Shown piece after piece: positions 41,876-64,000 of a DNA stretch of 64,000 bases (its first letter is position 1; every line of letters begins with the position of its first letter). The stretch spans positions 4,121,751 through 4,185,750 of the forward strand of contig OZ037773.1 of the NCBI GenBank assembly GCA_964035545.1. The letters are read 5' to 3'. Under the pieces are notes generated by a model, which searched no databases, was not told the origin of the DNA, and saw only the letters and a list, made by a program, of their open reading frames with translations. A program made the translations under genes and the position numbers. Origin of the DNA: Bugula neritina (Eukaryota; Animalia; Bryozoa).

Positions 41876-44075
41876 GTTTTTTTCTATATTTTTAATATAT
41901 ATGAAAAGATGAGTTCAAAGAAGTTTTAGCATTTAATTTTTCAAGTGTTATTGAAGGTTTTTTGTTAACTAAGTTAATGTAATAACACTAAGCAAGAATA
42001 AATACATAAATAAATTATCAGCCATTTCGTTCTTGTAGAATTGTATGCGATCAGAAATATAGCAGCATAATACGTAACGGAGCGTAAATTTGGTGAACAG
42101 ATACCCTTGTTTTCGGCAACTCCTAATACATTTTTATAATAATCAAGTTATAAAAAGTCAGTTAAAACATTGATTTTGCCTGGTTCGTTCAATAATAACA
42201 ATGGTATGTATATAACTACTGTAAGAAACCTCTTAACCTGTATATTGTTTATGAAAGGTTTGAGAAGTAGCGTTTGTAGAGAGCATTACTTCAGAATAAT
42301 TATACTGTGTGTATAGATGCAAAAATCCTAAACAGAGTTATGTGAACATCTCACAATAGGATGATAGAGAATAACTTTATTTGTAAAGCATTCCCAACTA
42401 TAACTCTAGATCAGCATATAGGCTTGAGTAGTAATCAGTATAACTAACTTTAGTGCGTTAGCTGCCAGAATAGAGTTACACTACAGTTTTAGAGTTGTAG
42501 GCATCTTATAGCAGAGATACATATGAGGTGCAGGTAGGCTGTTCACCTGCACTAACACATTTATTGGAGAGAAACTGGGACTGTATGGGAGGGCCTGAGT
42601 ACTTTCTGGGGCTACCTGGGGTTACCCAGTGCTAATTGTTTTGAAAACATAATTTCAATCACTCATCAGTTATAAGATAACAATCAACATTATATCTTCA
42701 AAATATTTGGAAATGATTGTTGATACATTTTTCTACATATTACACAACAATACACAGTGTGTTTTAATTTGGTATATATCTATGAGCTGTTGATCAGCTC
42801 AAGTTATACTTATTTCTTTGTATTTCGCTGTTTTCAATTGATAAAACAAATTTTTCTCTAGTTTCTATTTCGTGTGCTGTTTAGTAAGCAGGTGAGAAGT
42901 TAGTTTGCAAACCTCGTGAGAGACAAGTTTTCTCTGGCTCTATAGTAAAGTGTGAGTTGCTAAAATAGAGTTCAATAATTACCTGGTGGTAATTTTGAAT
43001 GAAAATTTAAAGCATTGAATTTGACATTTCCCTTTTTGAGCTTAAATAATTATTAATATTCTTTCAGCTGATAAAATGTTTGTAGTTTTCCAACTACTAA
43101 ACTTATTTAACAGTATAGGCATTAGGTAATCTGTCTATTTTAAAAAGTTATCACTATTAAAAGTTATTTTGTTAAAAGAGGTTAATTGCATGCAGGAATT
43201 GTAGATTATAATATTGGTAAGCGTTTTTCCACTTTTTACTGCAACTTGATGTTTTAGGAAGATGACTTGTACCTGGTTAACAACATTTTTAGTGTTAGCT
43301 CTATCTCGCTATACACTTGGTATGTATATATTTCAGGTGTTTTTTTAGGTATGTTGTAAGTTTTAGTAATTGAGAAGGCAACTTCGAGTCTTCCAAAATA
43401 TTTTTAAGACCACCAGTTTGATATAAATCTTGTGCTTACATACAGCTGTCAGTACAGTTTTGCAGTAATTTTAAATTAAATTCTAATACTTGCATGTTCA
43501 ATAATTAGCTAACGTTAAAGTATATTTAGATTATGTTTTTGGTATTTATTATGAAGTAAACATAATCAGTATTTAACAAGCTAAGTTCTTGGCATAGCCA
43601 GAAATAAGTTATAGCAAAGTATGTATTTATGTGTCTCAAAAACATTGATCATTTGAAAAGTACTGTTTACGTATTAATTGTTAATTATTCACGCGCTAAA
43701 TACCCTTGGATATTAACATAAATCTATATACAGAATCAAGGATGTTTAGACACCTACTATATATATAGGTACTAAAATTAGCATCATTCAACTTGCACTT
43801 TAGCAGTAGCTATATCAAACCTGACTCTTAACTCAATAGCTGTGCTAGTTTGCAATCAAGTGTTACATAAAAACGGCAAAACACTGCACATTTATCTCAT
43901 GAGTTTACCTTTATTATTTTCTTCAGTTAGGATTGTCAATCTGCATAAGTTTTATTCAATATCTTTATAGTAAGTTTTATGAAGTCTTGCATAAAAAAGG
44001 CAACATGCAGTAGTGGACAGTTATATAGAAAACTACTTTAAAAATAATAAACATTAAATAATTTTTTACATTCAG

Positions 44076-47000
44076 CTCAACCATCTACACTTATAGACTA
44101 CAATCCTGAGAATGGACCAGAGGTATATAAAGATAAGAATACAGCTATCTTCTGTTTGGCATCTGGCTATACAGATTTGAGAAGCTTACAGCTACAATAT
44201 CAATCTGATAAAGAAGACAAAGTCTACAGCACTGGATGTATTCGAAGTAGTGGAGGTGATATTGTGTGGGTTGCTTCATCAACCCCAGACATAGCTACGG
44301 TACCTGGTATAGAAGGACTTAGCATTAGTGATGCAGACTGTGGATATGCTACCGGGTCTGATGCACTAAATTTTATTTTTCAATTTACGATAACTGATTC
44401 ATCAATTGGAGGAAGCTTCTCCTGTAAAGGGGTTGAAGGAGGTGTCGGAGAAATTTCTTCTCAGAAAGTACCTGTAAATGTCAAAGGTATTTATTCTTAG
44501 ATTTTAGTTGAAAAAAGCATGCAATGAGTATAAAAAGGATAATGAATGATGTGTTATGCAAGCATTCAACTTTCATAAAACAAGTGCTTTCTAAACTCTT
44601 TACGCATAAACATTTCCATTGGATTAATTTATTTAATAAAAAAATACTTTGTAACGTTTAATAAACTGTTGCATATAGTGTTGTTTGTTAAAGCAAATAT
44701 TTCTAATTTATGAAATATTACTTGAAAGAAACTTAAGAATATTTTACCAGACCATTGATGCAGCTAATGTATTTTAAATTTGTCAAGCTTTAAGACGCAG
44801 CAAAAATTTTTTCTTAAAAACCACATGTTCTATAGTTTCCACCTAAATAAATTCAACCATATGTTTTTTTGTGGAATTTAATCATCGAATGAGTTCGGTT
44901 GTTGCAAAGAAGATCAAGGTTTGCAGTTTGAACTGCCAAAGCTAAAACTATAACTTTGACATTCATCTGATCGCCATTTAAAATTGCTAATTTTTTAAAT
45001 TTTTTGTTTTACAGTTGGTCCTCAGAGTTTGATTCTCAATGCATCTGATGTAGTAGAAGGTGAAGTTCTAAGCTTTAGTTGTGAGTCCAGAGATGCTAAG
45101 CCTGTCTCAGAATATGAGTACAGTAAGTAGAAGGTTTTTTACGTTTTTATTCTATTGTATCAAATTGACCGAAATAATTTAGCTACATGTTCATATAAGT
45201 TTTTTTATTATATAATTGTCTGCTCCCACCATCAACAGAAAAACTGGTGAAAACTAGCACTAAAACAAATAACATTTTGTTGAGCGTGTTAGTCTAATGT
45301 TGCGCATTTATGCATTCACAAATTTTAGTCAAAATATATACATTTGACCTAGTTGAAATTTGCATTGTAAAAGCCACTGCCAAAATTGTTGTATCGTGTG
45401 ATTTATTAATCAGCCTATTTCAGATTAATAATCAAAAGAACTAATAACTCAGTGTAGATAGGAGTATTTGATCATTACTTTGTATATAATCATATGAGTA
45501 ACATTTTCTCGATTATACTTTCTCTTTTATGCTGTCAACTTGACTAACTGATTACCTTTTGAAGGGGCATCAACTATCGATTTGAGTGAGTCGTGTTTCA
45601 CTATTAGAAAATCAGTTTCCGCATCAATATGATTTTTACGAGTTTTAGTAAAACTATGAAGGGGTAATATTGTAGTGGGCAGTGAAGCGTAAGGCCATGT
45701 GCTCACTAACCAATCAACATTAAAACACGTGATTACCCCCCCCCCCCCCCCCCCCCGCGAAGTAGAAAGGCTTCAGGACAGCATTTTAGATATATAACAG
45801 TTAGAGCGTGATGCTGATTGTGATAAGATAGTTGTTTTATATATGTGTGTTATTAAACTTGTGTTACTTTTACTCGCTACTTAGTGTACTAAATAAACCT
45901 TCTTCCCTCTTGATTACCCGTCTGATGTCTAGCAATGCAACGTGGATAATTACAGTATATACGAATCCCAATACTCAATATAATTGTGAAAATTATAACA
46001 ATATTCATCAGCATATACAATAACACAACTTTATACACATATTATTGGCTAACAGTCAAATGTAAAGACAGCTTTGGTACAGAAAGTTTTTCCACTTGTC
46101 TTAAAGAATCCCTGACACACTTTCTAGATGAAAACTAATATATATAAAAATATTTTAGTACCACACAAGTTAAGTGCGACAGACATTCTTTAAGCTTATA
46201 TACATCCTTTGCCTCATATAATATGCCCTGCTTTTCTCACTGGCAGATAAACAATTTACATAGTTATTGGTACAACTCTGATCATGCCACAAGCTCATTA
46301 GGTTGATCAGCATCGTCTATTTTAGTCTAGAAGTAACCTCCAATTATCTTTCACTCATTACACTTCGAGGGGTGGCCACGGAATTTTTTTAGAAATAGAT
46401 AAGTTTGAAGGGTCCTAATTAATCTGTGAAAACTCTAGACTGTTCTGTGCACCCAGTTAGCCACAAAAGTGCTTCAAACTTTCAAAATGAATCAGGAGTT
46501 GTTTTCTCTTAACGTTTTTGTGAATTGGCTAAATATTTTAAAATTATTCAAGCTAATTTATTTTATATAAGCAAAATAATTTTGCTTATAATTATAGATA
46601 CTCTTTTCACTTTTTTGTTATAAAAACTCTAGATTTTTCTGTCCACCCAGTTAGTCACAAAAATTCTTTAAAATGTTATAGGAGTTGTTTCCCCACAACT
46701 TTGTCCAAATTCATTAAGTATTATCTTGAAATTATTGAAGCTAGTTTATTATATATATAAGCAAAAACTTTTGCAGATAATCATAGATGTGTTTTTCATT
46801 TCTCTGAGTTTAATTCTAGTGATTTTCTTGTGAAAAAACCTGAAAAAAAGTGAATTATATGGACGAAAACAAGCAAAGGGATGGGTTTATTAGTTAATAA
46901 GGCAAACATTATTATTGATCGGTTATAAAAAAGGCGAATTATAAGTAAATCTGTGTCTGATAATGATTTTCTTCACGATTTTTATTATAATAACTACTTT

Positions 47001-50000
47001 TACAAAAAATTAATGAGAAGCATGAGCAGGTTGATTTGGACTCCGGAAGATAATATTTTAAATGTGTACAATTGAGCTTTGCCAATAAATTTAAGCTGAA
47101 CTATATATAAATAAGCAATTTGGTTTTTAGCACAATGCTATTGGTTAAAATGCCTATTTTTATACTATCTTGATATAATGACTCTAGAGTCAATTTATCT
47201 TAGTTATAGTTACAGAAGAAATACCCTAAAGCTTCCCTATAATTTAAAATGTATATGGTTATATTTCGACCACCCATTAGAAAAATGATCTTGGGATGCC
47301 TTATTCAAAGATCATTGACATAAAAATTTTTCATGTGTGCCATTTATCACAAAAATAATAATTTCTTATCAGCACAACTCAAATGGTAACAATTAGATTA
47401 TGAGGAAGCAGATACGAAAACTTTGTTACATGCAAAATATCTTATAAACATCATAATCTCACGTGTAATAATGAAATCTCAATCTTTCATTCTAAGTCTC
47501 ACTATTTGCAAAACATTACCTTCTTACCAATTGTATTTTTTCACGGGTGTGGTAATCGTGGTGTCATGCCAGATAGAGGCTAGGCTAAATTTCCCACTTA
47601 GACGCTAGTTATTTATTTTAGTAAAATGTATTTTCATGTGCAACTTATTTTAATATTATTGAAATATATGTATATTTAAATAAACTTGGATCAATTGCTT
47701 GTTATTTAGCACATAAATAAACTTCTTTGATTTGCATTAACTTATTAATTTTGTATATTCTATACATCTTGCCTGTTGTTTGAAAAGATATTTTGTTAAT
47801 AAGTATCCATTAAAGATAGTGTCTATGATTATTGTATTACTACTTTTTGTCCCACACAAATTCGAAAAATAATAGAATATTATTCTAGATAATTCATGTT
47901 AGCTACTATAGCTATTAACATATTAGCTATTTAGCAATCAATTCATCAGATATATAGGTAATAATAATATATATATGGTAACAAAATAAAAACAGCGTCT
48001 ATCTGGGAGGAAACCATAATCATATTAGGTATTTGGATGTCAACATTACAGCAAATAAATCCGAACCGCAGTTGTGTGCAGCACTTACTAGATTTCATGC
48101 TTCAACAGGTTGTGATTCGACTATAGTGCTTTTTATATGGAAAAGGATAGCGCACAGCCTACTCTCTTTTGAGAAAATATCCATAATGTATGGGAACCTT
48201 TGAACACATTGGGAAGTATTTTAAGCTGTAAGCCATTACAGTGGCTGAAGTAGAACACTTTGTCTATAAACTTTATGGAGCAGGAAATTTAAATATAGAT
48301 GATGTCCGATACACTGTATTTTGTTCACCGTCTAAAATAACTTAATAGAGTTTGCCTCCAACAAAAGATGAATTATATTTGCACATAAAAAGAGCAAATT
48401 ATTAGGCAGCCATTTGGAGAAGGGGGACCACAGCCACCCCCAGAACATCATGGAAGGATTGTTGAGAATTATGGCAGCATAAATATAAAGTGAATGATGT
48501 TGCAAAATTTAAACTGCTCCTGTAAGACCAGCTGCAACATATCAAGATGTGGATGTCAAAAGTCTCAAATGCAGTGCATGCACTGATGTTTGTCAATGTA
48601 AGGATTGTCTGAAAAGAAGCTCTATATTGGGGAAGAAGCTGATGAGACTGACGACAGTGAAAATGATTGGCGAGAATATTTTTTCATAATGAAGCACTAT
48701 TTTTAGACTTTTGTTATATATTTTGCTGCAACTAATCTGATTTGATCATCTCTCATGCTTCTGTTTCTTTAAATAATTTTGCAGAATCTTGTTGATTTTT
48801 GCAGACGTTTACCGACAGACTAGCAAATGATTCACTTGGGCTGAGCTCAAGAGATTTCAATATTTATTCATTTCAACATTTATTTTGTACTATAATTTTA
48901 TAAATATAGTTTTTTCACACATCAGCATGACTTTTTTATTTTTGTATAAATAGCTTGGTCATACAATTATTCTGCATGCTTATGCCTCATGCAATATGTC
49001 GATTCATAACAAACATATATGTTTATATAAACAACTTGGTTTTAATTATAGATAGCGTCTTGCAGTCTTTAAATTCAATATCAGCATAGCATTTCAAGTA
49101 AGAGACAATTATTTTTGGTATTTCAGCAAATATTTTTTCTTCAAGATAGCTTGATAAAATTGGATACTATTTAGCACAATCTACATTTCTTTTTATCACC
49201 CATCTAAAACGTCAATTTGTTTTTTGCAATAACTTGAGTTTGGGTAAAGATAAAATTTTAGAGTTTGTAAATTTAGAATCAGCACAACAACTTTTTTTGA
49301 GTGGCCACCTATAAGTAAAGTGTAATAAGCCAATTTTTTGAGCACTTTTTGAGAGGTTACTTCTAGACTATTTCTAATGAACTTAATTATTTGAATGCAA
49401 TGTAATTTCAGAAGTGAATAACCAGTCAGTCTCTCCGCCTACCTACATTCCTGAGAAAGCTGACAGGGATGGAGTGTTGATATCATGTAGAGATATCGTT
49501 CATAGAAACTGGAAAGATGGAAATACGGAAACTTCAGTTTTGCTCATGCCTAAATGTAAGTAAACATGCATGCAGACTACTGTTGAGTTTAAAAGTGATT
49601 GGGTTTGATTAAAAGTGCGGCAGGAAATTTTATAATTGCAATAACTACAAACAGAAATTGAAGGGTGAACAAGCCAATCATCATGCTAAACATACTTCCT
49701 AACTGTAGGTTTTATTACTATATTGTACCAGCACAAAAAAACTTTAATATTTTTTTATTGTCATGTTCATAGACATTGATGTAAAATCGGAAACAGAAAG
49801 TACAATAGAACTACAAGTCAAGGCTGAAGATGGCGCTGTAGAACTAGACTGTGATCCACATGTTACAGGAAACCCTAAACCAACCATCTTCTTCTGGGTA
49901 CAAAACGGGACTGAACAATCAGAAGAGACAAATAACAAGTTACTCCTGACTGCACAGACTGCTGGTACCAACGAAGCGGTGATGTGTACTGCTGGAAACT

Positions 50001-53000
50001 CTCTGGGTTTGTTCTTTGAAACTTGTTGCTGACAAAACAACTAATAATCACTTAGCTTCTAGATATAGTGACAATTGACATCACTATTGTATTTCAAAGC
50101 AGATTTTCAACTTGACTCAAAGAAAAGCTGCATTTCTATATCTATATTAGAACAGCAAACTATATTACAAAAGGTTTGATAAATTATCAAGGTCGAATTT
50201 GATGCTATATACTTTTATAATAATTGTGTAACATTAAATAATACTACCATCAGGGTTTATACGTTACATCTCTTAATATATAGCATCGTTTTATTTATAA
50301 CAGGAATCTTATAGTATATTAAAGCTGTTAGCCGGTGCACTTCAGTTATCTAATTACAGGAAAGAATGTGACTGTAACATGGCTTATAGAATGGAATATG
50401 ATGATTACCATAGCAGGTGAGAAAGTCATATACTTTTTAAAAACAATATTGATGCAGCATTAAGCAGTAAAATGATAATAATATAGTGCTATTTAGATCA
50501 TCTGGCATTTCATAGAATGTATTGTATAATATGATCGCATATAAAATGCTGCTAGTTTCTCCTATTGCAGATAGTATGTGTAGCATGTGACATCCTATAT
50601 AATAGTACCCTTACGAACTAGTTAGTGTAAAAGATATCACGACAAGCTATATATTTCATTAGATTATAGTATCATGCAAGATTATGTAGTTTAATTATCT
50701 CTCTACAGAAAAGGATGTGACTGTATCCATGAATACAGAATCCAACGGCGTGACAGCTGTAACAGGTGAGCGTTTTAGAATGTTTACAGTTTGATCACAA
50801 ACATTTACCCTCTTGAAAGCTTATTATTGTAATGGGATTACGTAGTATAATAATGGGGTCGTCCCCTCCTATATGGAATACTTATAACTATGTTCTACTA
50901 TCCAATCAGAAGGACCGGAAGACAAGGTTCCGGTCAAGTGACTGTGCGCGGGTTAGCTAGCAGAAACCATGCGTTGTTGAGAGCAGGGACTCGTAGTAGT
51001 AACATGTGTTTATAATTGATTGATGTATTGTGGTATTCTGATATAATGTTATAATTATGTTTATCGGGTTAAATAAAGGTTATCGTACGCAAGCTCTATT
51101 AGTAGTTGCTAGTTAAATTGACATTCAATACGCAGGCAATCCACGCTTGATAATTGTGCTAAAACTCACAACAGTGGTGGCAGCGGTGGGATTTTGCGTA
51201 TATCAAGATGACAGAAAGAGGCACAGAGCTACCCATTCGGAGAAATAAATGTGAGGAAGATAACGTTGCTATACCTATAGAACCAGAAGTGAGAGTGCAT
51301 AGGGAATGTTATGAAGAGAAGTACTGGCTGAGGGTGCCCACCTTCTCAGGTGAGGAGCCGGTGGAGCAATTCGTTCAGGAATTCCAGGATGTAATGAAGG
51401 TTGCACAGTGGCCACCCCGAATAGCATTGCTCAAGCTCTGGATGGCGCTGTCAGACAAAGCCAAGCCATACGGAGTGGAACCGGACATCGACGGGATCTT
51501 TGCCTCCCTGCGGGCCCGTTTTGGTATTTCCGCTGTAGATGCGCGGGCCCGTCTCCAAAGACTGCGGCGTGATCCTCACACGCCGCTACAAGAGCACGCT
51601 ACCACGGTAATGAGGCTGGCGCAGATCGCGTTCCGCGATCTGCCGCAAGTAAACCGTGAGAGGTACACTTATGATGCCTTCATGCAATCCATCAATGACT
51701 TGGGACTCCTTCACCAACTCCTGGCGAGGGGAGTCACCACGGTCGAAGGTGCGCTTGCAGAAAGGGAAGCATACCTTCTGGCCAGTCAGCTGCACCGAAA
51801 CCGTGTGACTTCTCGTCAGGTGGACATGGAGCCCTCCGCTGCTCCTACCGCTTCTAACGCGAAAACCCCAGCGGTGGCCAAGGTGACGCAGATGACGGTG
51901 GCATCGAAGGTCACACAAATGACCGACATGCTGGCCAAACTGGTCTCCGCCTTGGCCCCTCTCAGCCAGCTAGACACCACCCGTGAGCTTGACGGGCCAC
52001 TGGTGCAGTCGCCTGGTAGAGGACACCCCTCCTGCTGGGAGTGCGGAAGACCAGGACACTTCCAGAAACACTGTCCCCGACTTCAACCAGGGTTAAACTA
52101 CGACGACTCGCGGATGCTCCCACATCCGGCGGGCCGCCGATAAAACCCCAAGGGAGAACACAGTGGGGTCCGCCACGCCGGACACCCGTCCGGGACCTCG
52201 CGGAACGGCCACCGGGACGGCAAGCAGGCTGTACAAGCCGCTCGCCGCCGGTATTCTCCATGCCACCCTGCAACAGGTTCGACAAACGACGAACCGCAGA
52301 GTCTGCGAGGGGAAGAGCCCTTCGGCAGCTGGTCCCCAGTCGTTGTCAGGAACCTAACCCCTCCGCCAGGGCGAGGGAGATGAGGTCACCCAAGATACCA
52401 CTACATCCCCACGAGAGCAGCCTGTTTCTACCAGAACAGATAGCCGGCAAGCCTGCCAAATTCCTGTTAGACACAGGCTGCACCACCAACCTCCTGGGTC
52501 GTCGATTCTTCGACACACTCAGCGCTCAGATCCGAAGCAGGTTGGGACCGTACGAAGGCGATCATGGCACCCTGGCAGACGGGTCGTGCATCCCCTTCTA
52601 CGGTATCATTGAACTCCCTGGGAGCGTCTGTGACTAGACCATCCAGGAGAGGTTCATAGTCGGACAGCTCCAAGAGGACGCCATCCTTGGGATGCCATTC
52701 TTACAACGACACGGGTGTCGCATCGATTTTGGCAAATCTGCGATGTTTATGGGCGGCCGGGAGCTTGCCTGTGTCGATAAGTTTGGCCATCCCCTAACGG
52801 GAGAAGAGCCGATAGTACGTACCTGTACTATGCCCGGCCACTCCCGGGACACCGTCCACCGCCAGGTAGACGGTGGCCGTACCTCCAGGCCGGGAGCTGT
52901 TGAGAGAGCGCACCCGAACGTCCCACCTGTCCACAGCTCTAACCAGCTGACACGGAGAGGAAAGACCTCGGTGCCATGCCTCCACTCACCCTCGGAGACG

Positions 53001-56000
53001 GTGAATCTACCACCCACCTCTCCACCAAGCTGTACTCCTTCTGTTCAAGAAGATAACAGCAGGCCATCGCGGGAAACCGCGATGGGAAGCCCTCTAGAGA
53101 GCCCGTCTCCGGGGCGAAGGACTGCCTCACCCCACGCCCCACACAGCCAAGGGACTCATGGGAGAGAATCAGACGGTTGCGTAGATAACGAGAAGCGCCA
53201 AGAGACGGCCACGTTACTACACAAAACCGAGGCTACACCTCACCTTGGGGATCCTGACATGCCCCCAGAGGCGGCACAGGACCTCCACGCCGAACCCGTC
53301 TCAGCCGATGGCGTCAAGGAGCTACGACACCTCCAGGAACAGATTCCGGGGGTGGTAGCCGACGTCTATCAAATTAAACGGGAAGGGCGACGACCCAGTG
53401 ACAAACAACGGAAGCAGGGCTGCGCCGAGTGGCAGCTGTACTGCCGACGTTGGAACGCACTGCGGATCGAGCCGGATGGTCTATTGACCATATCTTTGGC
53501 CGCTAACCACCACCAGCCAGACCAGGAGAGAACTCTCTGTCCTGCCGCCATCCGCTGAGAGTTGATAGAAGAGGTACACCAACAGGCTCACTGGGGAGCC
53601 CAACAGGTGCTCACCGAACTACAACTCTGGTAGTATTGGCCTAACATGAAGCGTGAAGTACGGCGCAGAGTTAGGCAGTGCGGAGTCTGCCGGGCCAGTA
53701 AGCACGGCCGCCCTCCTGACAAGGTGGGGCGGCGAAGGCAAAGTGCAGACAGACCCGGGCAGACGGAGACTGCTGACCTGGTCAACAAACCGCCCAGGAT
53801 GCAACCCAAAGCAGTGGCGAGGCAGAAAAAACCACACCCGTTCAGGGAAGTGCGCTCACCGCCTCCAGCGTACAAGCTGCCGCCACCACTTCCTAAGTTA
53901 GGAACCGACCGGGAAGTGCAAAACCCCCCCACTGGAGGGGCTCCGTACGGAGATTCTAGGAAAGCTCCATTTGTCATAAACTGGCTGGAGGCACCACCCG
54001 TGAGACGTGACCGTCCACGGGTGAGTAAACCGCCTTGGTTGGTGACGACACCTCGGAAACGGTGTTCTAGACCAACCCCCGCGTATCTCAAGGACTTACC
54101 ACGTGCCGTTCAGGGCGCGGTCAAACGTCCCACGAGGCACCGTACGGGGAAGAGAGCAAGGTGTGGGAGTTGTGAACACCACGAGAATATCAACTTTTGC
54201 TTCGGCGGAATCTCAAACGAGATTCATACGCCGGAAGTAATTAGCCCTAGCCACGTTTCACAACCACGCTGCTCGCTCTTTCATCACATTGATACAGCTT
54301 TGAGTAGACGTACGTAGAAATCATAAACATACCACTCTCATTCATAATGGCTTGCCAAGAATCGAGAGGTGAGTTAGTTATGTTTTTGGTACGAGGACTA
54401 AACTGTATTAATCAGCTTAACTGTAACAGAATAAGCTGGAGACTCGGTAATGATTTTTAGTGGTGGGAATTCACATTGACTCTAAGACTGAACAGTCTGT
54501 TACAGCAGTGTGTGTTTTCGATCAACTATTCATTAGCTGAGTCTCACAAGTGTCTAATTGAGTTAAGTACCCACCAGGCTGTATACGCCGGTTGTACTCA
54601 GTGTACCCTCTTACACTGTTATACTCTTGCAGATCACACTCAATTGACCAACTCCGGGTCACAAGATCTACACCCCCTCTCCTCCTTGGACAACAGACCG
54701 GAAACGGACAACGGACTGCCCGTGGCACTGCGTCGAAGACATAAATAGGTGTCACGACGTACGGAGCGGCAAATTGAAGAAGCCTGGGGACCAAGTGGCT
54801 CACAACGAACCTGCCATGTGTGTTATGAGGAGCTGCCCTCGCACCAAGGACTACGGCTGCATGTAAATGCACACTTCCTATTACGCTTTTTTGCTTTCTT
54901 GTGTGTTCTCCAAACTAAAAGAACCACTATGAACTTAACCATCCTTTCATCTATTTCACGGTCTGTCTCTCTAACACCACTGATATCATGGATATCATTT
55001 TCATCTTTTTTCCTGGTGAATGCTTGATGTAATGCAGCTTAAATGGAAAACACATCCAGGTGACTTGGTGATGTTACTTGTAACTAAAGGCGGTTTTTTT
55101 TATTTCAAATCTGTACAGAGAACAAAGAGCAAGCAATGGTTCCGGCAGCCAATTTGAATAGCCTGAACCCTTCTGATTCTGAATCCCAACCCACTAGTTC
55201 AGTTTGGGAATCTAAATTACTATCAAACTTTGAGGGTTTTGCCATGTAAAAACTGAGTATAGTGCCTGTAACATATTTCTATTTATATTTTCCTAATTAG
55301 TATCAACATTGTCAATAATTGTGTTTTTGATGATTTAATTTTTTCATGGTTGCCTTTATTGAACTATGTATAGGTTTTATAAGTTTCATATTCATATTTA
55401 ACAATTTCAATAATTTTGAATAGATGTTTTTTAATTAATATTTAATTTTCTCTTCACTACTGTGCTTTAACTTATGCTACATATGTATGCACATTGTGAT
55501 AAAGTTGAATAATAAAGTCAATTATGATAAGAAGGCTAAAATGAATTTATTAATCATCTCACAGATCACACTGCATGCAAATACACAAATACTAACTTCA
55601 TAGCCATCTTTAATGGACAAAGGTGAGCTATAGGGTCATAGTGGCAGACAACAGAGCCACGAGTCAGTAACCATGTGTATACAGAACATACAGTGTTACT
55701 AGAGCATATCATATAACAGCTTACCTGTAGGAGTATATGCAGTTCATAACAATATTTACATACACATTCTAGTAAACTAAATCTGATTGATCTTGAAGTA
55801 AATTACAAAAAATGTATAATTTAATACTTTTTGTATTTTCAAATGCATATACATTGTTTGTAGAAAATATTGTACTTTAACAACTGATTCACAAATTTTT
55901 AACCAATTGCAGTTCACATTTATTCTTTAGCTAGTACAGCCAATGTTTTCAGACTATCCCCCTCCCCGTATTCACACGTTAGTATCCTATGTCGTAACTG

Positions 56001-59000
56001 CAAATTTTAGCCATTTTTGTCAACATTTGGGCTGAGTCATATCTCGGTATATGTTGCGGCTTTATTATTTTGGAACATACAAGGGAAGGATTTTAAATAT
56101 GTTTGATAAGAACAGCTGATAATGAGAGAATGACTCCTAATTGACACCAATATTGTGTAATCTATAAAATTATTATTTGCAAACAATATAAAATCAAATA
56201 TATAACAATGTTGCATTGTTGAATATTTTAAAAAAAAAATTTCTTATGATTCCATACATTCTTTACATCACAAAACAAAACAGCTTCATAGACATCACAA
56301 AATTAAGTTTCTTCTATAAAAGTCTCTAGATTCTAAATAACTCTAAGTTAGATACTCATCTACTACTGTATATAGGCAGGACCTTTAACTACTCACAATT
56401 ACTATGATGTTATATCTCAGCTATCTGATGTGTTTGTTTATCCGTATTTCCGGTATGTGATGTTTTACAGTACTTATCGAACTCAAAATACAAATATAAC
56501 AAAATGATTATGCAATCATATTTTAGAAAATACATTACAGCCAATTTGCGTTAATGATAGTTTTTCTAATGCAAACAATAAACAAAATAGCTGCAAAATT
56601 AGTGAATGTAAGTCTAAGATGTCTCATCTAGAGTTTATTTACCAAACCACTGAGTAGAAGCTTACCATAGAAACTCACACAGCGTTATAGATTATTTGTA
56701 CCAATCAATGATGTTTCTTCTATGGAGTTGGTCATGATGTAGGTTCCAAGTTTAATATTTCCATGTGTACAAAAAGTAAAGCTAGAAAGGCTTCAGATTT
56801 TAGTTTGACCAATAGGATAAATGCATTATATTACACCCTAATGCAATTTTTATCAATGCTTTGTTTATTTCTTTTCTATGTTATACAAAACAACATCAAA
56901 ACACTGTTGCCACCGCTATAACATATAAAAGCAGCAAAACACTGTATATTTATCTCATGACTTTACCTTTATTATTTTCTTCAGTTAGGATTGTCAATCT
57001 GCGTAGGTTTTATTCAATATCTTTATAGTAAGTTTTATGATGTCTTGCAAAAAAAAGGCAACATGCAGTAGTGGACAGTTATATAGAAAACTACTTTAAA
57101 AATAATAAACTGTAAATAATTTTTACATTCAGCTAAACCATCTGCACTCATAGACTACAATCCTGGGAATGGACCAGAGGTATATAAAGATAAGAATATA
57201 GCTGTATTCTGTGTGGCATCTGGCTATACGGATTTGAGAAGCTTACAGCTACAATATCAATCTGATATAGAAGACAAGGTTTACAGCACTGGATGTACTC
57301 GAAGTAGTGGAGATGACACTGTGTGGGTTGCTTCATCAACCCCAGACATAGCTACGATACCTGGTATAAAAAGACTTGGCATTAGTGATGCAGACTGTGG
57401 ATATGCTAGCGAGTCTGATGTATTATCTTTTCTTTTTCAATTCACAATAACTGAGTCAACAACTGGAGGGAGTTTTTCCTGTAAAGGGGTTGAAGGAGGT
57501 GCCGGAGAAATTTCTTCCTCAGAAGTACCAGTAGATGTCAAAGGTCATTATTTTCAAGTTTTAGTTGAAACAAGCAATGGGTATAAAAAAGGATTATGAA
57601 TGATGTATTACGCAAGCATTCAAATTTCATAAAACAAGTGCTTTCTTGACTCTTTACATAAAAATTTCCATTGGGTTAATTTATTTAATATAAAGAAAAG
57701 CTTTGTAATGTTTAATAAATTGTCGCATACAGTGTTGTTTGTTAAGGCAAATATTTCTAATTTATGAAATATTACTTGAAAGAAACTTAAAAATATTTTA
57801 ACAGACCATTGATGCAGTCAATGTATTCTAAATTTGTCAAGCTTTAAGGCGCAATAAAGATCTTTTTTAAAAACCACATGTTCTACAGTTTCCACCTGAA
57901 TAAATGCAACCATATGTTTTTTTGTGGAAATCAATCATCGAATGAGTTCGGTTGTTGCAAAGAAGATCAAGGTTTGCAATTTGAACTGCCAAAGCTAAAA
58001 CTACAATTTTGACATTCATCTGATCGCTATTTAAAATTGCTAATCTTTTAAATTTTTGCTTTACAGTTGGTCCTCCGAGTTTGATTCTTAATGCATCTGA
58101 TGCAGTAGAAGGTGAAGTTCTAAACTTTAGCTGTGAGTCCAGAGATGCTAAGCCTGTCTCAGAATATGAGTACAGTAAGTAGAAGGTTTTTTACGTTTTT
58201 ATTCTATTGTATCAAATTGACCGAAATAATTTGGCTACATATTTATATAAGTTTTTTACTATATAATTGTCTGCTCCCACCATCAACAGAAAAACTGTTG
58301 AAAACTAGCACTAAAACAAATAAAATTTTGTTGAGCGTGTTAGTCTAATGTTGCGCATTTATGCATTCACAACTTTTAGTCAAAATATATACATTTGACC
58401 TAGTTGAAATTTGCATTGTAAAAGCCACTGTCAAAATTGCTGTACCGTGTGATTAATTAATCAGCCTATATCAGATTAATAATCAAAAGAACTAATAACT
58501 CAGCGTAGATATGAGTATTTGATCATTACTTTGTATATAATCATATGAGCAACATTTTCACGATTATACTTTCTCTTTTATGCTGTCAACCTTTTGAAGG
58601 GGCATCAACTATCAATTGAGTGAGTCGTGTTTCACTATTAGAAAATCAGTTTCCGCATCAATATGATTTTAACGAGTTTTAGTAAAACTATGAAGGGGTA
58701 ATATTGTAGTGGGCAGTAGAGCGTAAGGCCACGCGCTCACTAACCACTCATCATTAAAACACGTGATTACCCTCCCCCCTCGGCAAAGTAGAAAGGCTTC
58801 AGGACATGGTGAAAACGGTCACTGCAATCATACCTCGGCCAGACAACACCCCCATGGAAGCATCAGACTCTCCAGAAGAAGCGACGCCAACTCCAACCAA
58901 GCCTAACCGACTAGCAACTGTTGAGGAAAGACTCCTACGACTGCAGGATGAATTCACCCAATTGGCCCCCGACTTACTCAGCACTACAATGAGCCTTAGT

Positions 59001-61205
59001 GAACTAAAGGGCTCAGTGGGACGCCTTAAGCGTAGATTACGTGCACGGCAAGCACGACACCGGATCCAGTCCCTGCAAAACTAGAAGCTGGAAGTGGACA
59101 ATTCCACCCCGCATATCCTCGGGGTACTACATTGTGATCGTGTAAATGCTTGATCTGTTAACGACCAATCTGTGTAATGATCCAGATCTCTCTCTCTGTA
59201 GCTGGCCAGCTGTGTGTTGGCCGTCTCTTTATCTTACTTATCTATATGTCGTACGTTTGATATTTCTTTTCTTTTACTTTGTGGATTTTCCTTACTTATG
59301 TCATTTTTGCATTATTATACTATTTTGTTTTATCAGAAAGTGGGGCTTTCTGCTTGTGGGGGCGGTGTAATGGGATTAGGTAGTATAATAATGGGGTCGT
59401 CCCCTCCTATATGGAATACTTATAACTATGTTCTACTATCCAATCAGAGGGACCGGAAGACAAGGTTCCGGTCAAGTGACTGTGCGCGGGTTAGCTAGCG
59501 GAAACCATGCGTTGTTGAGAGCAGGGACTCGTAGTAGTAACATGTGTTTATAATTGATTGATGTATTTTGGTATTCTGATATAATGTTATAATTATGTTT
59601 ATCGAGTTAAATAAAGGTTATCGTGCAAGCTCTATTAGTAGTTGCTAGTTAAATTGACATTAAATATGCAGGCAATCCACGCTTGAGAATTGTGCTAAAA
59701 CTCACAACATTATGAATTATTGCATTAAGTTATTTCCTAGGCAGCAAATATTGGCATCAAAAACCATTTATTTCTTTGGTCAAAAAACACAACCTCTAAA
59801 CGCATGCATCTTTTTATCAGTATATCTGTATCCAGTGAAGTATTTGTTAGAAATAACAATTTCTCTCATTTTCCAGTAAATAAGCAATGCTGCTTATTTC
59901 AAATATAGTGTTACTATAAGTGACTGTGTTGCTTTTGATTTACATATGTTATGTCCACTTGCAAAAGTAAAGCACTTGATCCTAAACTAAAAGTAGAAGA
60001 TAGAAGTGAACAACTTTAAAACAGTTGGTCATTGCTATTGATTTTAAAGTTGAGTGTTTTTTTAACTGCATTCAACCAATCTCTTGAATCTTGAAGGTGC
60101 TGTTAAAACTAAATTATTTTTCATCTGATGAAAGTTGAGTAAAATAATTATTACATGGTGCCGCTTAGATCATCTGGTATTTCTCAGAGTGTATTGTATA
60201 ATATGAGCATTGATAGAATGCTGCTAGTTTCTCCTATTGCAGATAGTATATGTAGCATGTGACATCCTATATAATAGTACCCTTACGAACTAGTTAGTGT
60301 AAAAGATATCACGACAAGCTATATATTCCATTAGATAGTATCATACAAGATTATGTAGTTTAGTTATCTCTCTACAGAGAAGGATGTGACTGTATCCATG
60401 AATACGGAATCCAACGGCGTGACAGCTGTAACAGGTAGGAGATTTATAACTTTACAGCCTAATTACAAATTTTCACCCTGTTGAAAGTCTATAAAGCATT
60501 GCATTAAGTTTTCTCCTATAAGCAGTAAATATTGGCATCAAAAATAATTTATTTCTTTGGTAAAAAAGCACAACCTCTAAACGCATCTTTTCATCAGTAT
60601 ATCTGTATTCAATGAAATATTTGCAAGAAATAACAATTTCTGTTACTGTCCAGTAAATAAGCAATGCTGTTTATCTCAAATATAGTGTTACTATAAGTGA
60701 CTGTGTTGCTTTTGATTTACATATGTTATGTTCACTTGCAAAAGCAAAGCACTCAATTGTAAACAAAGGGTAGAGAAGAGAAGTACGCTAATTTACAGCA
60801 ACTTTTCATCGCCACCAATTCCAAAGTTGAGATCTTTTTAACTGCATTTAATCAATCAGTCTTCTTGAGCTGCTGTGAAAACTAAATATTCTTTAATCTA
60901 ATGAAAGTTGAGTAAGAAATTGACTGACCAAACTTTATATAGGCAGTGAGAAAAATTTGTAATTGTATTTTCAAGTTATAGCCAAATAGCAACCGAGTTT
61001 TTGGACAATTATCATGCGATATAATCAAGTTAAAAAAATATTACTTTATATCTGTCTTCTCGGCTTTGCAGAAAAACGTCTGAATTTATCAACAGAAATC
61101 AAAGAGCAAGTTGATAGCGAGAATAAATCTCAAAGCAACCTGATGGCAGGCTACAGCTTGTTATCTATCATCATCCTATTCCTTTGGAACTGTATTTTAA
61201 TCTAA
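44076..61205 (+). CDS. Ig copy F (third V subfamily, stalked form); exons 44076-44486, 45015-45122, 49412-49555, 49773-50006, 50360-50416, 50709-50765, 60378-60434, 61072-61205; own leader exon missing
   Basis: All exons are open and phase 1, including three 57-nt stalk exons and the terminal EKRLNLSTEIKEQVDSENKSQSNLMAGYSLLSIIILFLWNCILI*. Large TE insertions lie in two introns. Confidence 0.65.
46323..49370 (+). mobile_element. 3.05-kb TIR DNA element with a decayed XPG/PIN-like nuclease plus Cys-rich ORF
   Basis: Perfect 18-bp TIR tagtctagaagtaacctc / gaggttacttctagacta, with a subterminal inverted ggtggccac. Remnant peptides are YEEADTKTLLHA (~47399), FHASTGCDS (~48093), LPPTKDELYLHIKRANY (~48352) and a Cys-rich tail (~48530-48610). 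Confidence 0.8.
50828..51173 (+). repeat. 5' LTR (346 bp)
   Basis: Direct repeat of 59366-59709, with about 8 substitutions and one 2-bp indel. Confidence 0.95.
51175..51192 (+). promoter_or_regulatory. Primer-binding site complementary to the tRNA-Leu 3' end
   Basis: TGGTGGCAGCGGTGGGAT is the reverse complement of ATCCCACCGCTGCCACCA and begins 1 nt after the LTR end. Confidence 0.88.
51208..52143 (+). CDS. gag: Gag (capsid-like plus CCHC zinc knuckle), 311 aa, intact
   Basis: VPTFSG..VEQF...F...W capsid-like start and CWECGRPGHFQKHC knuckle, directly after the PBS. Confidence 0.9.
   Translation: MTERGTELPIRRNKCEEDNVAIPIEPEVRVHRECYEEKYWLRVPTFSGEEPVEQFVQEFQDVMKVAQWPPRIALLKLWMALSDKAKPYGVEPDIDGIFASLRARFGISAVDARARLQRLRRDPHTPLQEHATTVMRLAQIAFRDLPQVNRERYTYDAFMQSINDLGLLHQLLARGVTTVEGALAEREAYLLASQLHRNRVTSRQVDMEPSAAPTASNAKTPAVAKVTQMTVASKVTQMTDMLAKLVSALAPLSQLDTTRELDGPLVQSPGRGHPSCWECGRPGHFQKHCPRLQPGLNYDDSRMLPHPAGRR
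52092..53760 (+). pseudogene. pol: Degenerate pol: aspartic protease and integrase Zn-binding remnant; no RT, RNase H or integrase core recognisable
   Basis: FLLDTGCTTN...DAILGMPFL with an in-frame TAG at 52635-52637; EVHQQAHWG...VRQCGVCRASK with stops. It is in the -1 frame relative to gag. Confidence 0.85.
54885..58806 (+). repeat. 3.9-kb host segment inside the LTR element; its first 462 bp match 63539-64000
   Basis: Abrupt switch from GC-rich to AT-rich sequence. 54885-55346 and 63539-64000 show no difference that I could see, and 56920-58806 is paralogous to 43865-45780. Confidence 0.93.
56404..58174 (+). CDS. Ig copy G, 5' part only (leader 56404-56452, V exon 57133-57543, exon 58067-58174), nested in the LTR element
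   Basis: TATA box, leader MMLYLSYLMCLFIRIS and an open F-type V exon (weak donor gtcatt), truncated in intron 3 at ~58806. Confidence 0.75.
59366..59709 (+). repeat. 3' LTR (344 bp)
   Basis: Preceded by the PPT-like gtgggggcgg and followed by TSD TTAT. Confidence 0.95.
60165..60920 (+). repeat. Second copy of a ~0.75-kb intron/stalk-exon tandem duplication (first copy 50493-50827 plus 59714-60160)
   Basis: ttagatcatctgg...tgctgctagtttctcctattgcagatag...exon...ttgcattaagtt...gttgagtaa is repeated. Confidence 0.85.
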
Positions 61206-62454
61206 GTTCCATATATTTCGCAACAAAAGACAAGTTTGAAGAAGGTATCTAGTTGTATTTTACAAGTTTTAATAAAGCAATTTGTTGATTAAATGACAAT
61301 CAGCTGAACAAGCATGATTGAAAAACATAAATATGAGGGCAAAGGATCGCAAAATTCCCTTATGAATACTAATATAAAATATGTCACTTGATGTATATAT
61401 CAGAAACGCAAGCATTGCTTTTATAGAAAAGAACATTTAAGTTTTGAAATGTGAGCCATGAACACCAAAAGTTTTCATAACTGTTTGAGGTATTTTGAAG
61501 TTTTAAAAGTATATCAGTGTGTCGTAGCATATGTCATGCAGTCAGGATTAAAACTAAAATATATATATGAATATATTGTATGTAACTACACTTATAACTT
61601 ATGCAAGCTATTTTCTATAAACTTGTAATACTTTATTATTATAGAAGTGTTAAAATATTTCTGACCTGAAAATTTTAAAGTTTTTAAAATTTATATCAAT
61701 TGACCATTTTCGCATCATAGAAACTTTGTCAATTTGCTTTAAAATAAAAAACACATATTGTCTATAAAACAAATGAACAATTGCGGAACATTTATTTGAT
61801 GGAGCTATCAATGTATTCTAATTTGGAATAAAAAAATAGAACTCATTAGCTATGCAAGTCACACACTGGCCTTTCAATTAAACATTGTGTTTTATAGAAC
61901 AAAACACACAAGATAGTTATACAAAACGAAAACAATAAAACTTTTTTCATTTTCTGGTAAAATATCTGAGATAGTGCTGAAAGTTTTATAAAAGTATGGT
62001 CTATCTGCATTTTCTATACTGCTTTTAATAATTTTTGCTGTATGTAGGTTTAATTTTTATTTATTTGTTTTTAGGAACTTGGCTACAGAAAACAAAAGTT
62101 TCAAGATAAGCAAAGAACTTACACATGGTGTAGATTTCAAGCAATTCAAGCATGCTAAAATTTGAAACTTTAAATTTAAATTATAATCCAAGCATGTCAA
62201 AAGATTGAAGAATGTAAAAATTAAAAATAAGTTAATGTGCAATATTTCAATAAAATAAAGATCCAAAAACTAAATTGAATTTAAATCTTCACTATATCTA
62301 TAATAATATATTTTCTGACTAGAAAAAATTATGTATACTTATAGGAATTATAGATATTATTACTATATGCAAATCATGTATGAAGTCAATTGAAAAAAGA
62401 CTATTAATTTGAAATAAAGTCGTAGTTAAGTAACCACCCTATACATACAATATA

Positions 62455-62605
<151 letters not shown>

Positions 62606-63117
62606 TGTGTGTTAAAGACACACAGCTGCCTGCTAAAAAGTCAGTTACAAGTCACAAAAAAGCCGGACGAATACTTTGAGATTGGAACACATACTAAAAG
62701 TATTAAAAACTGAAATTGAAACAACTTGTAAACCTTTGAACCAAAATTGGTTTAATTTTGATTAAACAAGTAGTTTAAGGTAATGTTTTTACTATTTGGC
62801 ACTCATCCAGTTGATTTTGATGATATTTTCTGATACAGAAGAAGTTATATCAATTCGAGCAGACGCCAAATAATCAAACAATCATCTACCTAAAATAGAC
62901 ACAAGGACTACAAAATAAACCTGCATGGAAACATAGCGGAGAAAAAGGAAAATGGGACTAAACGCATTAAAGTGTCAAAAACTCTGGCTATTGTTTTAGT
63001 GGGGCAAAGTGACAGATATAAAGTGAAAGCTTATACAATTGGCTAAAAAGTTGTACTAGAATTTCATACATGGCACGGCATAAAAATACAGAGCTTACTC
63101 GAGAAAACTTCCACATT

Positions 63118-63510
63118 TTAACTTCTGCAGATATACTTCTGAAAACTAAACTTTTCCCCCATCTCCTCCTTCAAATCCTCTAAAGTAAAACTTCCTTCTG
63201 TTTGCAATTGATTTAAGTACAGTTAGTTAATGTAGAGAAAAAATAAATCTTTCACATCTACTAACTATTTCATTACTGGTTGCAGGTCCTTCTATACCAG
63301 AGACAGTAACGATGTCGTTAGTTTATGAACTTTCAGATATTTCTTTCTTTCAAATCCACAACTGTATATTGCATTGTCTCTTTATCAGCTTGATATTGTA
63401 TCTGTAAGATTATCAGCTCTGACATCTATTAGATAATTAGTGATTTGTATATACATCTGATGAACTCAGAAAACTGCATGTCATATTTGTAAATGTTTAT
63501 CTGTGATTAT
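63118..63510 (-). pseudogene. Decayed, inverted V-exon relic of the Ig family (copy H)
   Basis: The reverse complement contains ttacagatacaatatcaagctgataaag (LQ.QYQ.DK), gacatcgttactgtctctggtatagaaggacct (DIVTVSGIEGP) and gaagttttactttagaggatttgaaggagga (KFYFRGFEGG, with the second canonical Cys lost), plus frameshifts. Boundaries are approximate. Confidence 0.8.
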
Positions 63511-64000
63511 GCTAGTGTCCAGTCTGTTTGGCGATTTTGCTTTTTTGCTTTCTTGTGTGTTCTCCAAACTAAAAGAACCACTATGAACTTAACCATCCTT
63601 TCATCTATTTCACGGTCTGTCTCTCTAACACCACTGATATCATGGATATCATTTTCATCTTTTTTCCTGGTGAATGCTTGATGTAATGCAGCTTAAATGG
63701 AAAACACATCCAGGTGACTTGGTGATGTTACTTGTAACTAAAGGCGGTTTTTTTTATTTCAAATCTGTACAGAGAACAAAGAGCAAGCAATGGTTCCGGC
63801 AGCCAATTTGAATAGCCTGAACCCTTCTGATTCTGAATCCCAACCCACTAGTTCAGTTTGGGAATCTAAATTACTATCAAACTTTGAGGGTTTTGCCATG
63901 TAAAAACTGAGTATAGTGCCTGTAACATATTTCTATTTATATTTTCCTAATTAGTATCAACATTGTCAATAATTGTGTTTTTGATGATTTAATTTTTTCA

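What the first reader, a model, noticed from the sequence alone, without database searches (positions are those of the whole stretch)
50828..59709. Gypsy LTR element inside one Ig gene carries the promoter, leader and V exon of a neighbouring paralogue
Seen: between intact LTRs with TSD, PBS and PPT lies 3.9 kb of intron-containing host DNA (54885-58806) holding copy G. Its start matches 63539-64000 with no visible difference, while the two LTRs differ at ~9 sites in 345 bp. Inference: the capture is younger than the insertion and happened in situ at the DNA level, from a donor ~8.65 kb downstream (repair template switch), rather than through mRNA. Because the cis signals and gag are intact, the element could now mobilise a V module in trans, a TE route to receptor diversification.
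Basis: partly seen in the sequence, partly recalled or inferred. Interest (0 to 1): 0.8.

Follow-up and report, generated by a model that had tools for sequence, protein, structure and literature searches.

The report
Host gene segment copied into retroelement
A resident LTR retroelement sitting in an intron of one Ig-like receptor gene later had about 208 bp of its interior replaced by a 3.9 kb DNA copy (5' flank, leader, V-like exon, one more exon) of the neighbouring paralogue, most likely by break repair; it is a clean but single local event, and nothing shows the cassette has moved.

Summary
LTRs lie at 50828-51173 and 59366-59709 (8 substitutions plus one 2-bp indel). There is a 4-bp TSD (TTAT), a 19-nt PBS matching the genome's own tRNA-Leu, and a PPT. 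Host DNA at 54885-58807 equals 63539-67461 at 3922 of 3923 positions, as seen after fetching the sequence beyond the window. The predicted downstream G gene is there.

At least 33 sibling elements carry about 208 bp exactly where the insert sits. The junctions share 4 bp (GCTT) and 2 bp (AT). The insert is about 90-fold less diverged from its donor than the LTRs are from each other (Fisher p = 1.4e-8). It keeps its introns and 1.5 kb of 5' flank. A post-insertion, DNA-level, microhomology-mediated copy from 8,654 bp downstream is therefore the best reading.

- The family is a non-autonomous derivative of a Ty3/Gypsy element that lacks RT, RNase H and the integrase core.
- This copy's ORF2 has in-frame stops, and the insert splits its ORF3.

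Both junctions and the insert occur only here in the assembly, so there are no daughter copies. The claim that it can mobilise a V module is unsupported. Short-read contigs could not confirm the junctions. The organism was not identified.

The parts
50824..50827 (+). left target-site duplication TTAT
   Evidence: The same 4 nt follow the 3' LTR. Siblings also have 4-bp TSDs.
50828..51173 (+). 5' LTR (346 bp, TG..CA, AATAAA at 51072)
51175..51193 (+). primer-binding site, 19 nt complementary to the 3' end plus CCA of tRNA-Leu(AAG/TAG)
   Evidence: One search gives the sequence. Searches found tRNA-Leu genes of this genome that end with the complementary 16 nt.
51208..52143 (+). gag ORF, 311 aa, open, with a CCHC knuckle
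   Evidence: zf-CCHC E=0.006, below the Pfam cut-off; 87-94% identical to about 27 sibling gag frames.
52020..54314 (+). ORF2 remnant. Aspartic protease at about 52437-52780. Integrase H2C2 zinc finger at 53634-53705. No RT, RNase H or integrase core. Interrupted by in-frame stops at 52635-52637 and within 53556-53633.
   Evidence: One search shows the deletion relative to the autonomous pol.
54476..54888 (+). N-terminal part of family ORF3 (C2H2-like motif), cut off by the insert
   Evidence: residues 1-138 of L025 ORF3, 89% identity.
54885..54888 (+). left junction microhomology GCTT (shared by element and donor)
54885..58807 (+). captured host segment X (3,923 bp including the shared junction bases). 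It is a copy of 63539-67461 and replaces about 208 bp of the element.
54885..56403 (+). 5' flank of the captured gene copy (G'), 1.52 kb. Promoter function is inferred only.
   Evidence: Position relative to the ATG. No transcription data.
56404..56452 (+). leader exon of G' (ATG, hydrophobic, ends in phase 1, GT donor)
57133..57543 (+). V-like Ig exon of G' (137 codons, phase 1-1)
   Evidence: AF2 pLDDT 79. Foldseek best hits are VHH, VH and CD8 V domains.
58067..58174 (+). exon 3 of G' (first half of the second Ig domain, phase 1-1)
   Evidence: Ig_3 E=0.17 only. Conserved in all array units.
58614..58614 (+). the only difference from the donor: A here, G in the donor and in paralogue F (derived CpG-to-CpA change)
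58806..58807 (+). right junction microhomology AT
58806..59084 (+). C-terminal part of family ORF3 (coiled-coil-like)
   Evidence: residues 208-299 of L025 ORF3, 88% identity.
59356..59365 (+). polypurine-tract-like GTGGGGGCGG abutting the 3' LTR
   Evidence: Conserved in siblings.
59366..59709 (+). 3' LTR (344 bp)
59710..59713 (+). right target-site duplication TTAT
63539..64000 (+). start of the donor (gene G with its 5' flank). It continues beyond the window to 67461 (L009:289-4211).

Best explanation
An RT-less, non-autonomous Ty3/Gypsy-derived LTR element inserted into an intron of Ig-like gene F, just after a stalk exon. Much later, a break or replication stall inside the resident element was repaired by copying 3.9 kb from the same chromosome 8,654 bp downstream. 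The copied stretch is the 5' flank, leader exon, V-like exon, exon 3 and part of intron 3 of paralogue G.

The copied tract was primed on a 4-bp microhomology (GCTT) and re-joined on a 2-bp microhomology (AT). About 208 bp of the element was lost, and with it the continuity of the element's third ORF. This fits a templated insertion of the SDSA, MMBIR or FoSTeS type.

Shown here: the anatomy, the junctions, the relative ages, and uniqueness in the assembly. Inferred: the repair mechanism itself, and any promoter activity of the copied flank.
For: 1. Single old insertion. TSD TTAT, and a contiguous empty site in paralogue G. LTR K2P is 0.024.
2. At least 33 siblings align up to 54888 and again from 58805/58806, with 200-210 bp between (one has 170 bp). 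None has host DNA there.
3. Insert versus donor: 1 mismatch and 0 gaps in 3923 bp. This is 93-fold below the LTR divergence, Fisher p = 1.4e-8.
4. The insert keeps two full introns, part of a third, and 1.5 kb upstream of the ATG.
5. Junction microhomology is 4 bp and 2 bp with no longer homology. By my estimate the chance of this much microhomology is about 0.004.
6. The donor sits in its native, F-colinear context on both sides.
7. The single difference is a derived CpG-to-CpA change in the nested copy. So the two copies are distinct loci in the assembly.
8. An assembler has no repeat to mis-join at either junction, and there are no Ns in the region.
Against: No read-level confirmation. In the one holder run (Logan short-read contigs), no contig was shown bridging 54884/54885 or 58807/58808. 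The only contig at the right end continues into the donor flank, and position 58614 shows only the donor's G. These contigs drop minority paths and this copy's own element words, so absence is uninformative.

The near-identity of insert and donor dates the last homogenisation, not strictly the capture.

The same final structure can arise in two DNA steps rather than one. The 'downstream, same strand' arrangement is also what a read-through-RNA route would need.
Confidence: 0.62

Rival explanations
1. Two DNA-level steps. First a tandem duplication of the 8,654-bp block from 58808 to 67461, which creates the X|E_right junction. Then a roughly 4.9 kb deletion running from the element's 208-bp segment through the first E_right copy and F's 3' part to the start of X, which creates the E_left|X junction.
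For: It gives exactly the observed order, and the observed spacing of 8,654 bp equals the duplicated unit. Both junctions have short microhomology. The locus is a tandem array prone to duplication.
Against: It needs two independent rearrangements in the short time allowed by 1 difference in 3.9 kb. No trace of the intermediate remains.
Confidence: 0.15
2. RNA route acting on the resident copy. A read-through, unspliced transcript of this element extends into G. Reverse transcriptase switches templates twice at microsimilarities, and the chimeric cDNA then converts the parental element by homologous recombination.
For: The anatomy matches LTR-mediated retroposition chimeras: an internal part is replaced and both junctions show microsimilarity (PMC5131818). 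The donor is downstream on the same strand, as read-through requires. The LTRs would keep their old divergence. A young autonomous relative with intact RT exists.
Against: It needs a transcript longer than 16 kb that passes the 3' LTR poly(A) signal, F's terminal exon and 7 AATAAA motifs, and that stays unspliced across two introns. It would also have to be packaged and then recombine rather than integrate. That is many low-probability steps.
Confidence: 0.08
3. Assembly artefact: chimeric reads or haplotype mixing placed a second copy of G's front end inside the element.
For: The two copies are almost identical. No public contig was seen bridging either junction, and 58614 shows only the donor base in run X1. 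No independent haplotig carries the junctions.
Against: It would need two false joins that re-enter the same element 208 bp further on, in the same orientation. Each join has only 2-4 bp of shared sequence, so there is nothing for an overlap assembler to confuse. The nested copy carries its own derived base. The X1 contig over 58614 has depth 102 against about 120-138 for its neighbours. That is near the roughly 101 expected if a second copy with another letter exists, but this is weak evidence.
Confidence: 0.07
4. Classical LTR-mediated transduction before integration. The chimera formed in a virus-like particle, integrated by chance next to its donor, and X was later homogenised with G by gene conversion.
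For: The chimera anatomy resembles that in PMC5131818. Gene conversion between 3.9-kb direct repeats 8.65 kb apart is possible.
Against: Landing within about 10 kb of the donor in 216 Mb has a chance of roughly 1e-4. Introns and non-transcribed flank are present. About 93 differences would be expected at the LTR divergence, but 1 is seen, with no patches of divergence. F and G nearby stay 8-11% diverged. No other copy carries X.
Confidence: 0.02

Closest known systems
LTR-mediated retroposition chimeras in animals (Tan et al. 2016, Genome Res, PMC5131818). Maize Bs1 is cited from my own knowledge and via the reference list of PMC2774510.
   Same: Host gene sequence replaces part of the internal region of an LTR element, with both LTRs kept. 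Short microsimilarity at both fusion points. Potential for exon shuffling.
   Different: There, the insert is processed mRNA captured by RT template switching before integration, with a median microsimilarity of 6 bp. Here the insert has introns and 1.5 kb of 5' flank. It is far younger than the LTRs, and it comes from 8.65 kb downstream of the resident element.
Microhomology-mediated templated insertions and dispersed duplications (SDSA gap repair, FoSTeS/MMBIR, filler DNA at breaks). Cited from established knowledge of DNA repair.
   Same: A kilobase-scale copy of a nearby cis template, 2-4 bp microhomology at both breakpoints, and a small deletion at the acceptor site.
   Different: Nothing mechanistic. 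The peculiarity is only where it landed (inside an LTR element within a paralogue's intron) and what it copied (a 5' flank, leader and V-like exon cassette).
Gene-fragment capture by plant LTR retrotransposons. In maize B73, 425 intact elements carry gene fragments from at least 189 captures (PMC2774510). See also the review PMC13317346.
   Same: An intact-ended LTR element carrying a host gene fragment.
   Different: Those fragments have usually been amplified along with the element. This one is a single, unamplified, in-situ event in an animal genome.
Non-autonomous LTR elements that keep gag (the BARE-2 and TR-GAG type of plants; own knowledge).
   Same: The family has LTRs, PBS, PPT and an open gag but no RT. 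It has many young copies, implying trans-mobilisation by an autonomous relative.
   Different: This family also keeps the protease, the integrase H2C2 finger and a conserved third ORF.

Membership tests
LTR retrotransposon, Ty3/Gypsy lineage | paired LTRs with TG..CA ends and a short target-site duplication | tested here: met
   4-bp TSD, as in siblings.
LTR retrotransposon, Ty3/Gypsy lineage | tRNA-complementary PBS next to the 5' LTR and a PPT next to the 3' LTR | tested here: met
   19-nt match to tRNA-Leu(AAG/TAG) of the same genome. G-rich tract before the 3' LTR.
LTR retrotransposon, Ty3/Gypsy lineage | pol with the order PR-RT-RNase H-IN | tested here: not met
   This copy and its intact cousin L024 have only PR and Integrase_H2C2. 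The order is met in the autonomous relative L032. The non-autonomous ORF2 aligns to L032 pol residues 6-442 and 893-1075. So this is a deletion derivative, not an autonomous member.
LTR retrotransposon, Ty3/Gypsy lineage | gag with a CCHC zinc knuckle | tested here: inconclusive
   The motif is present. Pfam E=0.006 and E=0.001, both below the gathering score.
LTR-mediated retroposition chimera (RNA capture) | host insert replaces internal element sequence, with microsimilarity at both junctions | tested here: met
   About 208 bp replaced. 4 bp and 2 bp shared at the junctions.
LTR-mediated retroposition chimera (RNA capture) | insert derives from spliced mRNA (no introns, no promoter) | tested here: not met
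   Two full introns, a partial third, and 1.52 kb of 5' flank are present.
LTR-mediated retroposition chimera (RNA capture) | chimera formed before integration, so the insert is as old as the LTR pair | tested here: not met
   1/3923 versus 8/344 differences, p = 1.4e-8.
Microhomology-mediated templated insertion (DNA repair or replication) | copy of a nearby cis template, short microhomology at both breakpoints, loss of a few hundred bp at the acceptor | tested here: met
   Donor 8,654 bp downstream on the same strand. Junctions GCTT and AT. About 208 bp missing relative to at least 33 siblings.
Microhomology-mediated templated insertion (DNA repair or replication) | junctions present in the organism's DNA (not an assembly product) | tested here: inconclusive
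   Logan contigs of run X1 showed no bridging contig, and they cannot show absence.
Immunoglobulin superfamily, V-type domain (captured exon) | sequence match to Pfam V-set, ig or I-set | tested here: not met
   No Pfam hit for the V exon up to E=5. A neighbouring exon of the gene hits Ig_3 at E=8e-4, below the cut-off.
Immunoglobulin superfamily, V-type domain (captured exon) | Ig V-like beta-sandwich with conserved Cys...Trp...Cys | tested here: met
   AF2 model pLDDT 79, pTM 0.76, from 8 paralogues. The top 50 Foldseek PDB hits are all V domains (VHH, VH, scFv, CD8), E about 1e-5, TM 0.58-0.72 normalised by target. Four invariant Cys and one invariant Trp. The prediction rests on a shallow alignment.

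The most novel reading that the evidence does not exclude
The copy placed a complete 5' flank, leader and V-like-exon cassette of a fast-diverging Ig-like receptor array between working LTR, PBS and PPT signals. The element belongs to a family that is demonstrably trans-mobilised in this genome. In this reading, retrotransposition could spread V-like exons, which would be a TE-driven exon-shuffling route for an invertebrate recognition-receptor family.

A nearer-term variant: all internal exons of F and G are phase 1-1, so the nested cassette already yields in-frame G'/F chimeric transcripts.
Probability: 0.07. Interest if true: 0.7.

Novelty: new member of a known kind. Interest (0 to 1): 0.38.

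Why it matters
The case is unusually clean and datable. A host gene segment entered a retroelement after the element had integrated, and it did so at the DNA level. Host sequence inside an LTR element therefore need not mean RNA-mediated transduction.

It also shows how a V-like exon cassette can be placed, in frame-compatible phase, inside a paralogue's intron in a diversifying receptor array. That is raw material for exon shuffling.

As it stands it is one unamplified local rearrangement, not evidence of a TE-driven diversification system.

Tried and rejected
1. Read support. One run holds the stretch (share of words 0.70). Laying its Logan contigs showed no contig bridging either junction, only the donor-type right end, and only G at 58614. 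A hole at 54994-56187 is probably due to filtering. The result is inconclusive, and the reads tools were then exhausted (one call each). Runs X2 and X3 hold next to nothing of the stretch.
2. Pfam on the V exon and on ORF2/ORF3 pieces gave no V-set hit and no RT, RNase H or rve hit.
3. The Atlas feature search for the V exon gave unnamed, mostly mollusc-labelled clusters at 0.94-0.95, with recognition below the reliable level. I treated this as a lead only and did not use it for taxonomy.
4. Organism identification failed. The look-up of encoding contigs on gag was blank. A findings search by words was blank. The V-domain profile hits are unnamed Logan or JGI short ORFs.
5. I looked for transduced daughter copies or alternative haplotigs using X and both 240-nt junction probes. 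There are none.
6. I considered that E_left and E_right belong to two different elements. I rejected this because of the matching TSD, the continuous empty site in G, and the fact that both halves are closest to the same siblings, L013 and L018.
Full report
**Setting.** The window is G000:C9:4121751-4185750 of a 216-Mb, AT-rich (about 31% GC) eukaryotic assembly with no Ns here. I could not name the organism.

F and G share the same exon plan:
- a leader exon;
- a 411-nt exon for an N-terminal V-like domain;
- exons for two further Ig-like domains;
- one or two short stalk exons;
- a last exon ending in a hydrophobic tail.

All internal exons are phase 1-1.

The V-like exon has no Pfam hit. 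Its AlphaFold2 model, built from eight paralogues, has pLDDT 79 and pTM 0.76. Its best PDB matches by Foldseek are all immunoglobulin V domains, with E about 1e-5 and target-normalised TM 0.58-0.72. It has four invariant Cys and one invariant Trp. A profile of it finds only 30 proteins among 1.84 billion cluster representatives, all but a few short unnamed ORFs. The domain is therefore lineage-restricted. 'Ig gene' and 'V exon' are acceptable as structural labels, resting on prediction.

**The element.**
- LTRs lie at 50828-51173 and 59366-59709. They differ by 8 substitutions and one 2-bp indel (K2P 0.024).
- The ends are TG..CA, flanked by a 4-bp duplication TTAT.
- The 19 nt at 51175-51193 are complementary to the 3' end plus CCA of tRNA-Leu(AAG/TAG) genes that I located in the same genome.
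- A G-rich tract abuts the 3' LTR.
- Paralogue G aligns without interruption across the insertion point, so it serves as an empty-site control.
- The insertion lies in an F intron, about 60 bp after a stalk exon.

**What kind of element.**
- gag is open (311 aa) and has a CCHC motif.
- ORF2 has an aspartic protease and the integrase H2C2 finger, but no RT, RNase H or integrase core.
- A cousin subfamily (L024) has the same content, with 99%-identical LTRs and intact ORFs.
- A 7.5-kb relative in the same genome (L032) has gag 60-62% identical and LTRs 99% identical. Its 1466-aa pol carries PR, RT, RNase H, H2C2, rve and SH3 in that order, which is the Ty3/Gypsy order.
- The short ORF2 aligns to residues 6-442 and 893-1075 of that pol. 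A third ORF is shared at 55% identity.

The window's family is therefore a non-autonomous deletion derivative of a three-ORF Ty3/Gypsy element. It has about 27 close copies, and more than 90 copies in the cousin subfamily. Sibling LTR pairs are 96.8-99.7% identical and have 4-bp TSDs. In the window's copy, ORF2 is interrupted by in-frame stops.

**The insert.** I fetched the sequence beyond the window (L009, L010). With it, 54885-58807 matches 63539-67461 with 1 mismatch and no gap in 3923 bp. The donor lies 8,654 bp downstream on the same strand, in a context colinear with F on both sides.

The insert contains:
- 1.52 kb of 5' flank;
- the leader exon (56404-56452);
- intron 1;
- the V-like exon (57133-57543);
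- intron 2;
- exon 3 (58067-58174);
- about 630 bp of intron 3.

**Junctions and siblings.**
- Sibling elements align to this copy up to 54888 and again from 58805/58806. In at least 33 of them, 200-210 bp (170 bp in one) lie between those points.
- About 208 bp of the element was therefore replaced.
- Element and donor share GCTT at the left junction and AT at the right, and nothing more.
- By the usual (k+1)p^k(1-p)^2 expectation, this much microhomology at both ends has a chance of roughly 0.004 (my estimate).
- The lost segment encodes residues 139-207 of the family's ORF3, which is therefore split.

**Order of events.**
- F and G differ by 8-11%.
- The LTRs differ by 2.4%.
- The insert and its donor differ by 0.025%. 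The last two differ with Fisher p = 1.4e-8.
- The single difference (58614) is A in the nested copy, and G in both the donor and F. It is a derived CpG transition in the nested copy.
- The sequence of events is therefore: F/G duplication, then element insertion, then capture.
- Strictly, the near-identity dates the last homogenisation. But a DNA-level capture into the resident element must post-date insertion in any case.

**Mechanism.** I favour a one-step, DNA-level, microhomology-primed templated repair, at confidence about 0.6. The reasons are:
- retention of introns and untranscribed flank;
- the cis donor;
- the short microhomologies;
- the small acceptor deletion;
- the age gap.

A two-step path (an 8,654-bp tandem duplication followed by a 4.9-kb deletion) gives the identical product and cannot be excluded (0.15).

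The anatomy also resembles LTR-mediated retroposition chimeras, in which mRNA replaces an internal part of the element with microsimilarity at both junctions (PMC5131818). The classical version fails on introns, on age and on the improbable landing next to its donor (0.02). A read-through-RNA plus cDNA-recombination version fits the geometry but needs many unlikely steps (0.08).

**Artefact?** The public-read test was inconclusive. The one holder run is short-read Logan contigs. None was shown bridging either junction, one contig runs from X into the donor flank, and 58614 shows only G. Such contigs drop minority branches next to roughly 2000-fold repeats.

The depth of the contig over 58614 is 102, against about 120-138 for its neighbours. 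That is close to what two copies differing at that base would give (my estimate, about 101). The contig at the right end does not show the matching drop.

Against an artefact:
- two false joins would be needed;
- they would have to re-enter the same element 208 bp downstream;
- each would rest on only 2-4 shared bases;
- the nested copy has its own derived base.

I put an artefact at about 0.07.

**Can it mobilise a V module?** LTRs, PBS, PPT and gag are present. The family has clearly been mobilised in trans, and a young autonomous relative exists. However:
- X and both junctions occur only here in 216 Mb;
- this copy is among the older ones of its family;
- the insert adds three exons with splice sites and 7 sense-strand AATAAA motifs, against 1 in the 3.7-kb left internal part;
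- the element grows from about 5.2 to 8.9 kb;
- there are no expression data.

The claim is an untested possibility, not a finding.

A more immediate consequence follows from the all-phase-1 exon structure. Splicing between nested G' exons and F exons would stay in frame. A G' exon 3 to F stalk join would, however, carry only half of an Ig domain.

**Known or new?** Gene fragments inside LTR elements are common in plants (425 elements in maize; PMC2774510; review PMC13317346). They are also documented in animals (PMC5131818). Microhomology-mediated templated insertions are a standard class of structural variant. This case is a well-resolved new example, unusual in combining the two. I score it as a new member of a known kind, of moderate interest.

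**Earlier notes of this scan.** Other notes on the same stretch (s1-441952, possible chimeric gene; s1-441654, diversifying array) are first-reader notes. I checked only the exon phases and the array structure.

Noticed in passing
L024 (G000:C9:4013981-4022980), L025 (G000:C6:1875360-1881660), L032 (G000:C8:1156000-1165500): A large family of RT-less LTR elements: about 27 copies close to the window's, and more than 90 in a cousin subfamily whose gag is about 70% identical. They keep open gag, protease, the integrase H2C2 finger and a conserved third ORF (C2H2-like motif plus coiled coil). In the cousin copy examined (L024) the LTRs are 99% identical. A 7.5-kb autonomous three-ORF Ty3/Gypsy relative has the missing RT, RNase H and integrase core. 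Retention of PR, H2C2 and ORF3 in a non-autonomous family is unusual and may mean these parts are needed in cis.
   Followed up: partly
window 63136-63420 (minus strand): A degenerate, stop-ridden remnant of a V-like exon in inverted orientation. It lies about 120 bp upstream of the donor's left boundary. It matches V exons of Ig-like clusters elsewhere on the contig at 67-72% identity.
   Followed up: partly
window 43865-50827 and 59710-61202 (F); ext 65058-70447 (G): All internal exons of F and G are phase 1-1, so any exon combination stays in frame. F has two copies of a roughly 780-bp unit that carries the stalk exon (50466-50819 resembles 60138-60487; 59719-60149 resembles 60498-60921), where G has one.
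   Followed up: partly
window 44078-44488 versus 57135-57545: The V-like exon is more diverged between F and G (88.8% DNA, 81% protein) than the flanking introns (about 92%). It is only 40-44% identical in protein to the V exons of the upstream array units. This is consistent with faster change in the membrane-distal domain.
   Followed up: no
window 46322-49368: F carries about 3 kb that G lacks, between exon 3 and exon 4. It holds several short open pieces and may be another mobile-element remnant.
   Followed up: no
L016 and L017 (G000:C4:12965510-12972544 and 13030499-13037552): Two sibling elements share identical flanks and the same TSD (ATAG). A segmental duplication about 65 kb apart therefore copied an already inserted element.
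   Followed up: no
window 62418-62618: A (TA)n and (CA)n microsatellite of about 200 bp lies between F's end and G's 5' flank.
   Followed up: no
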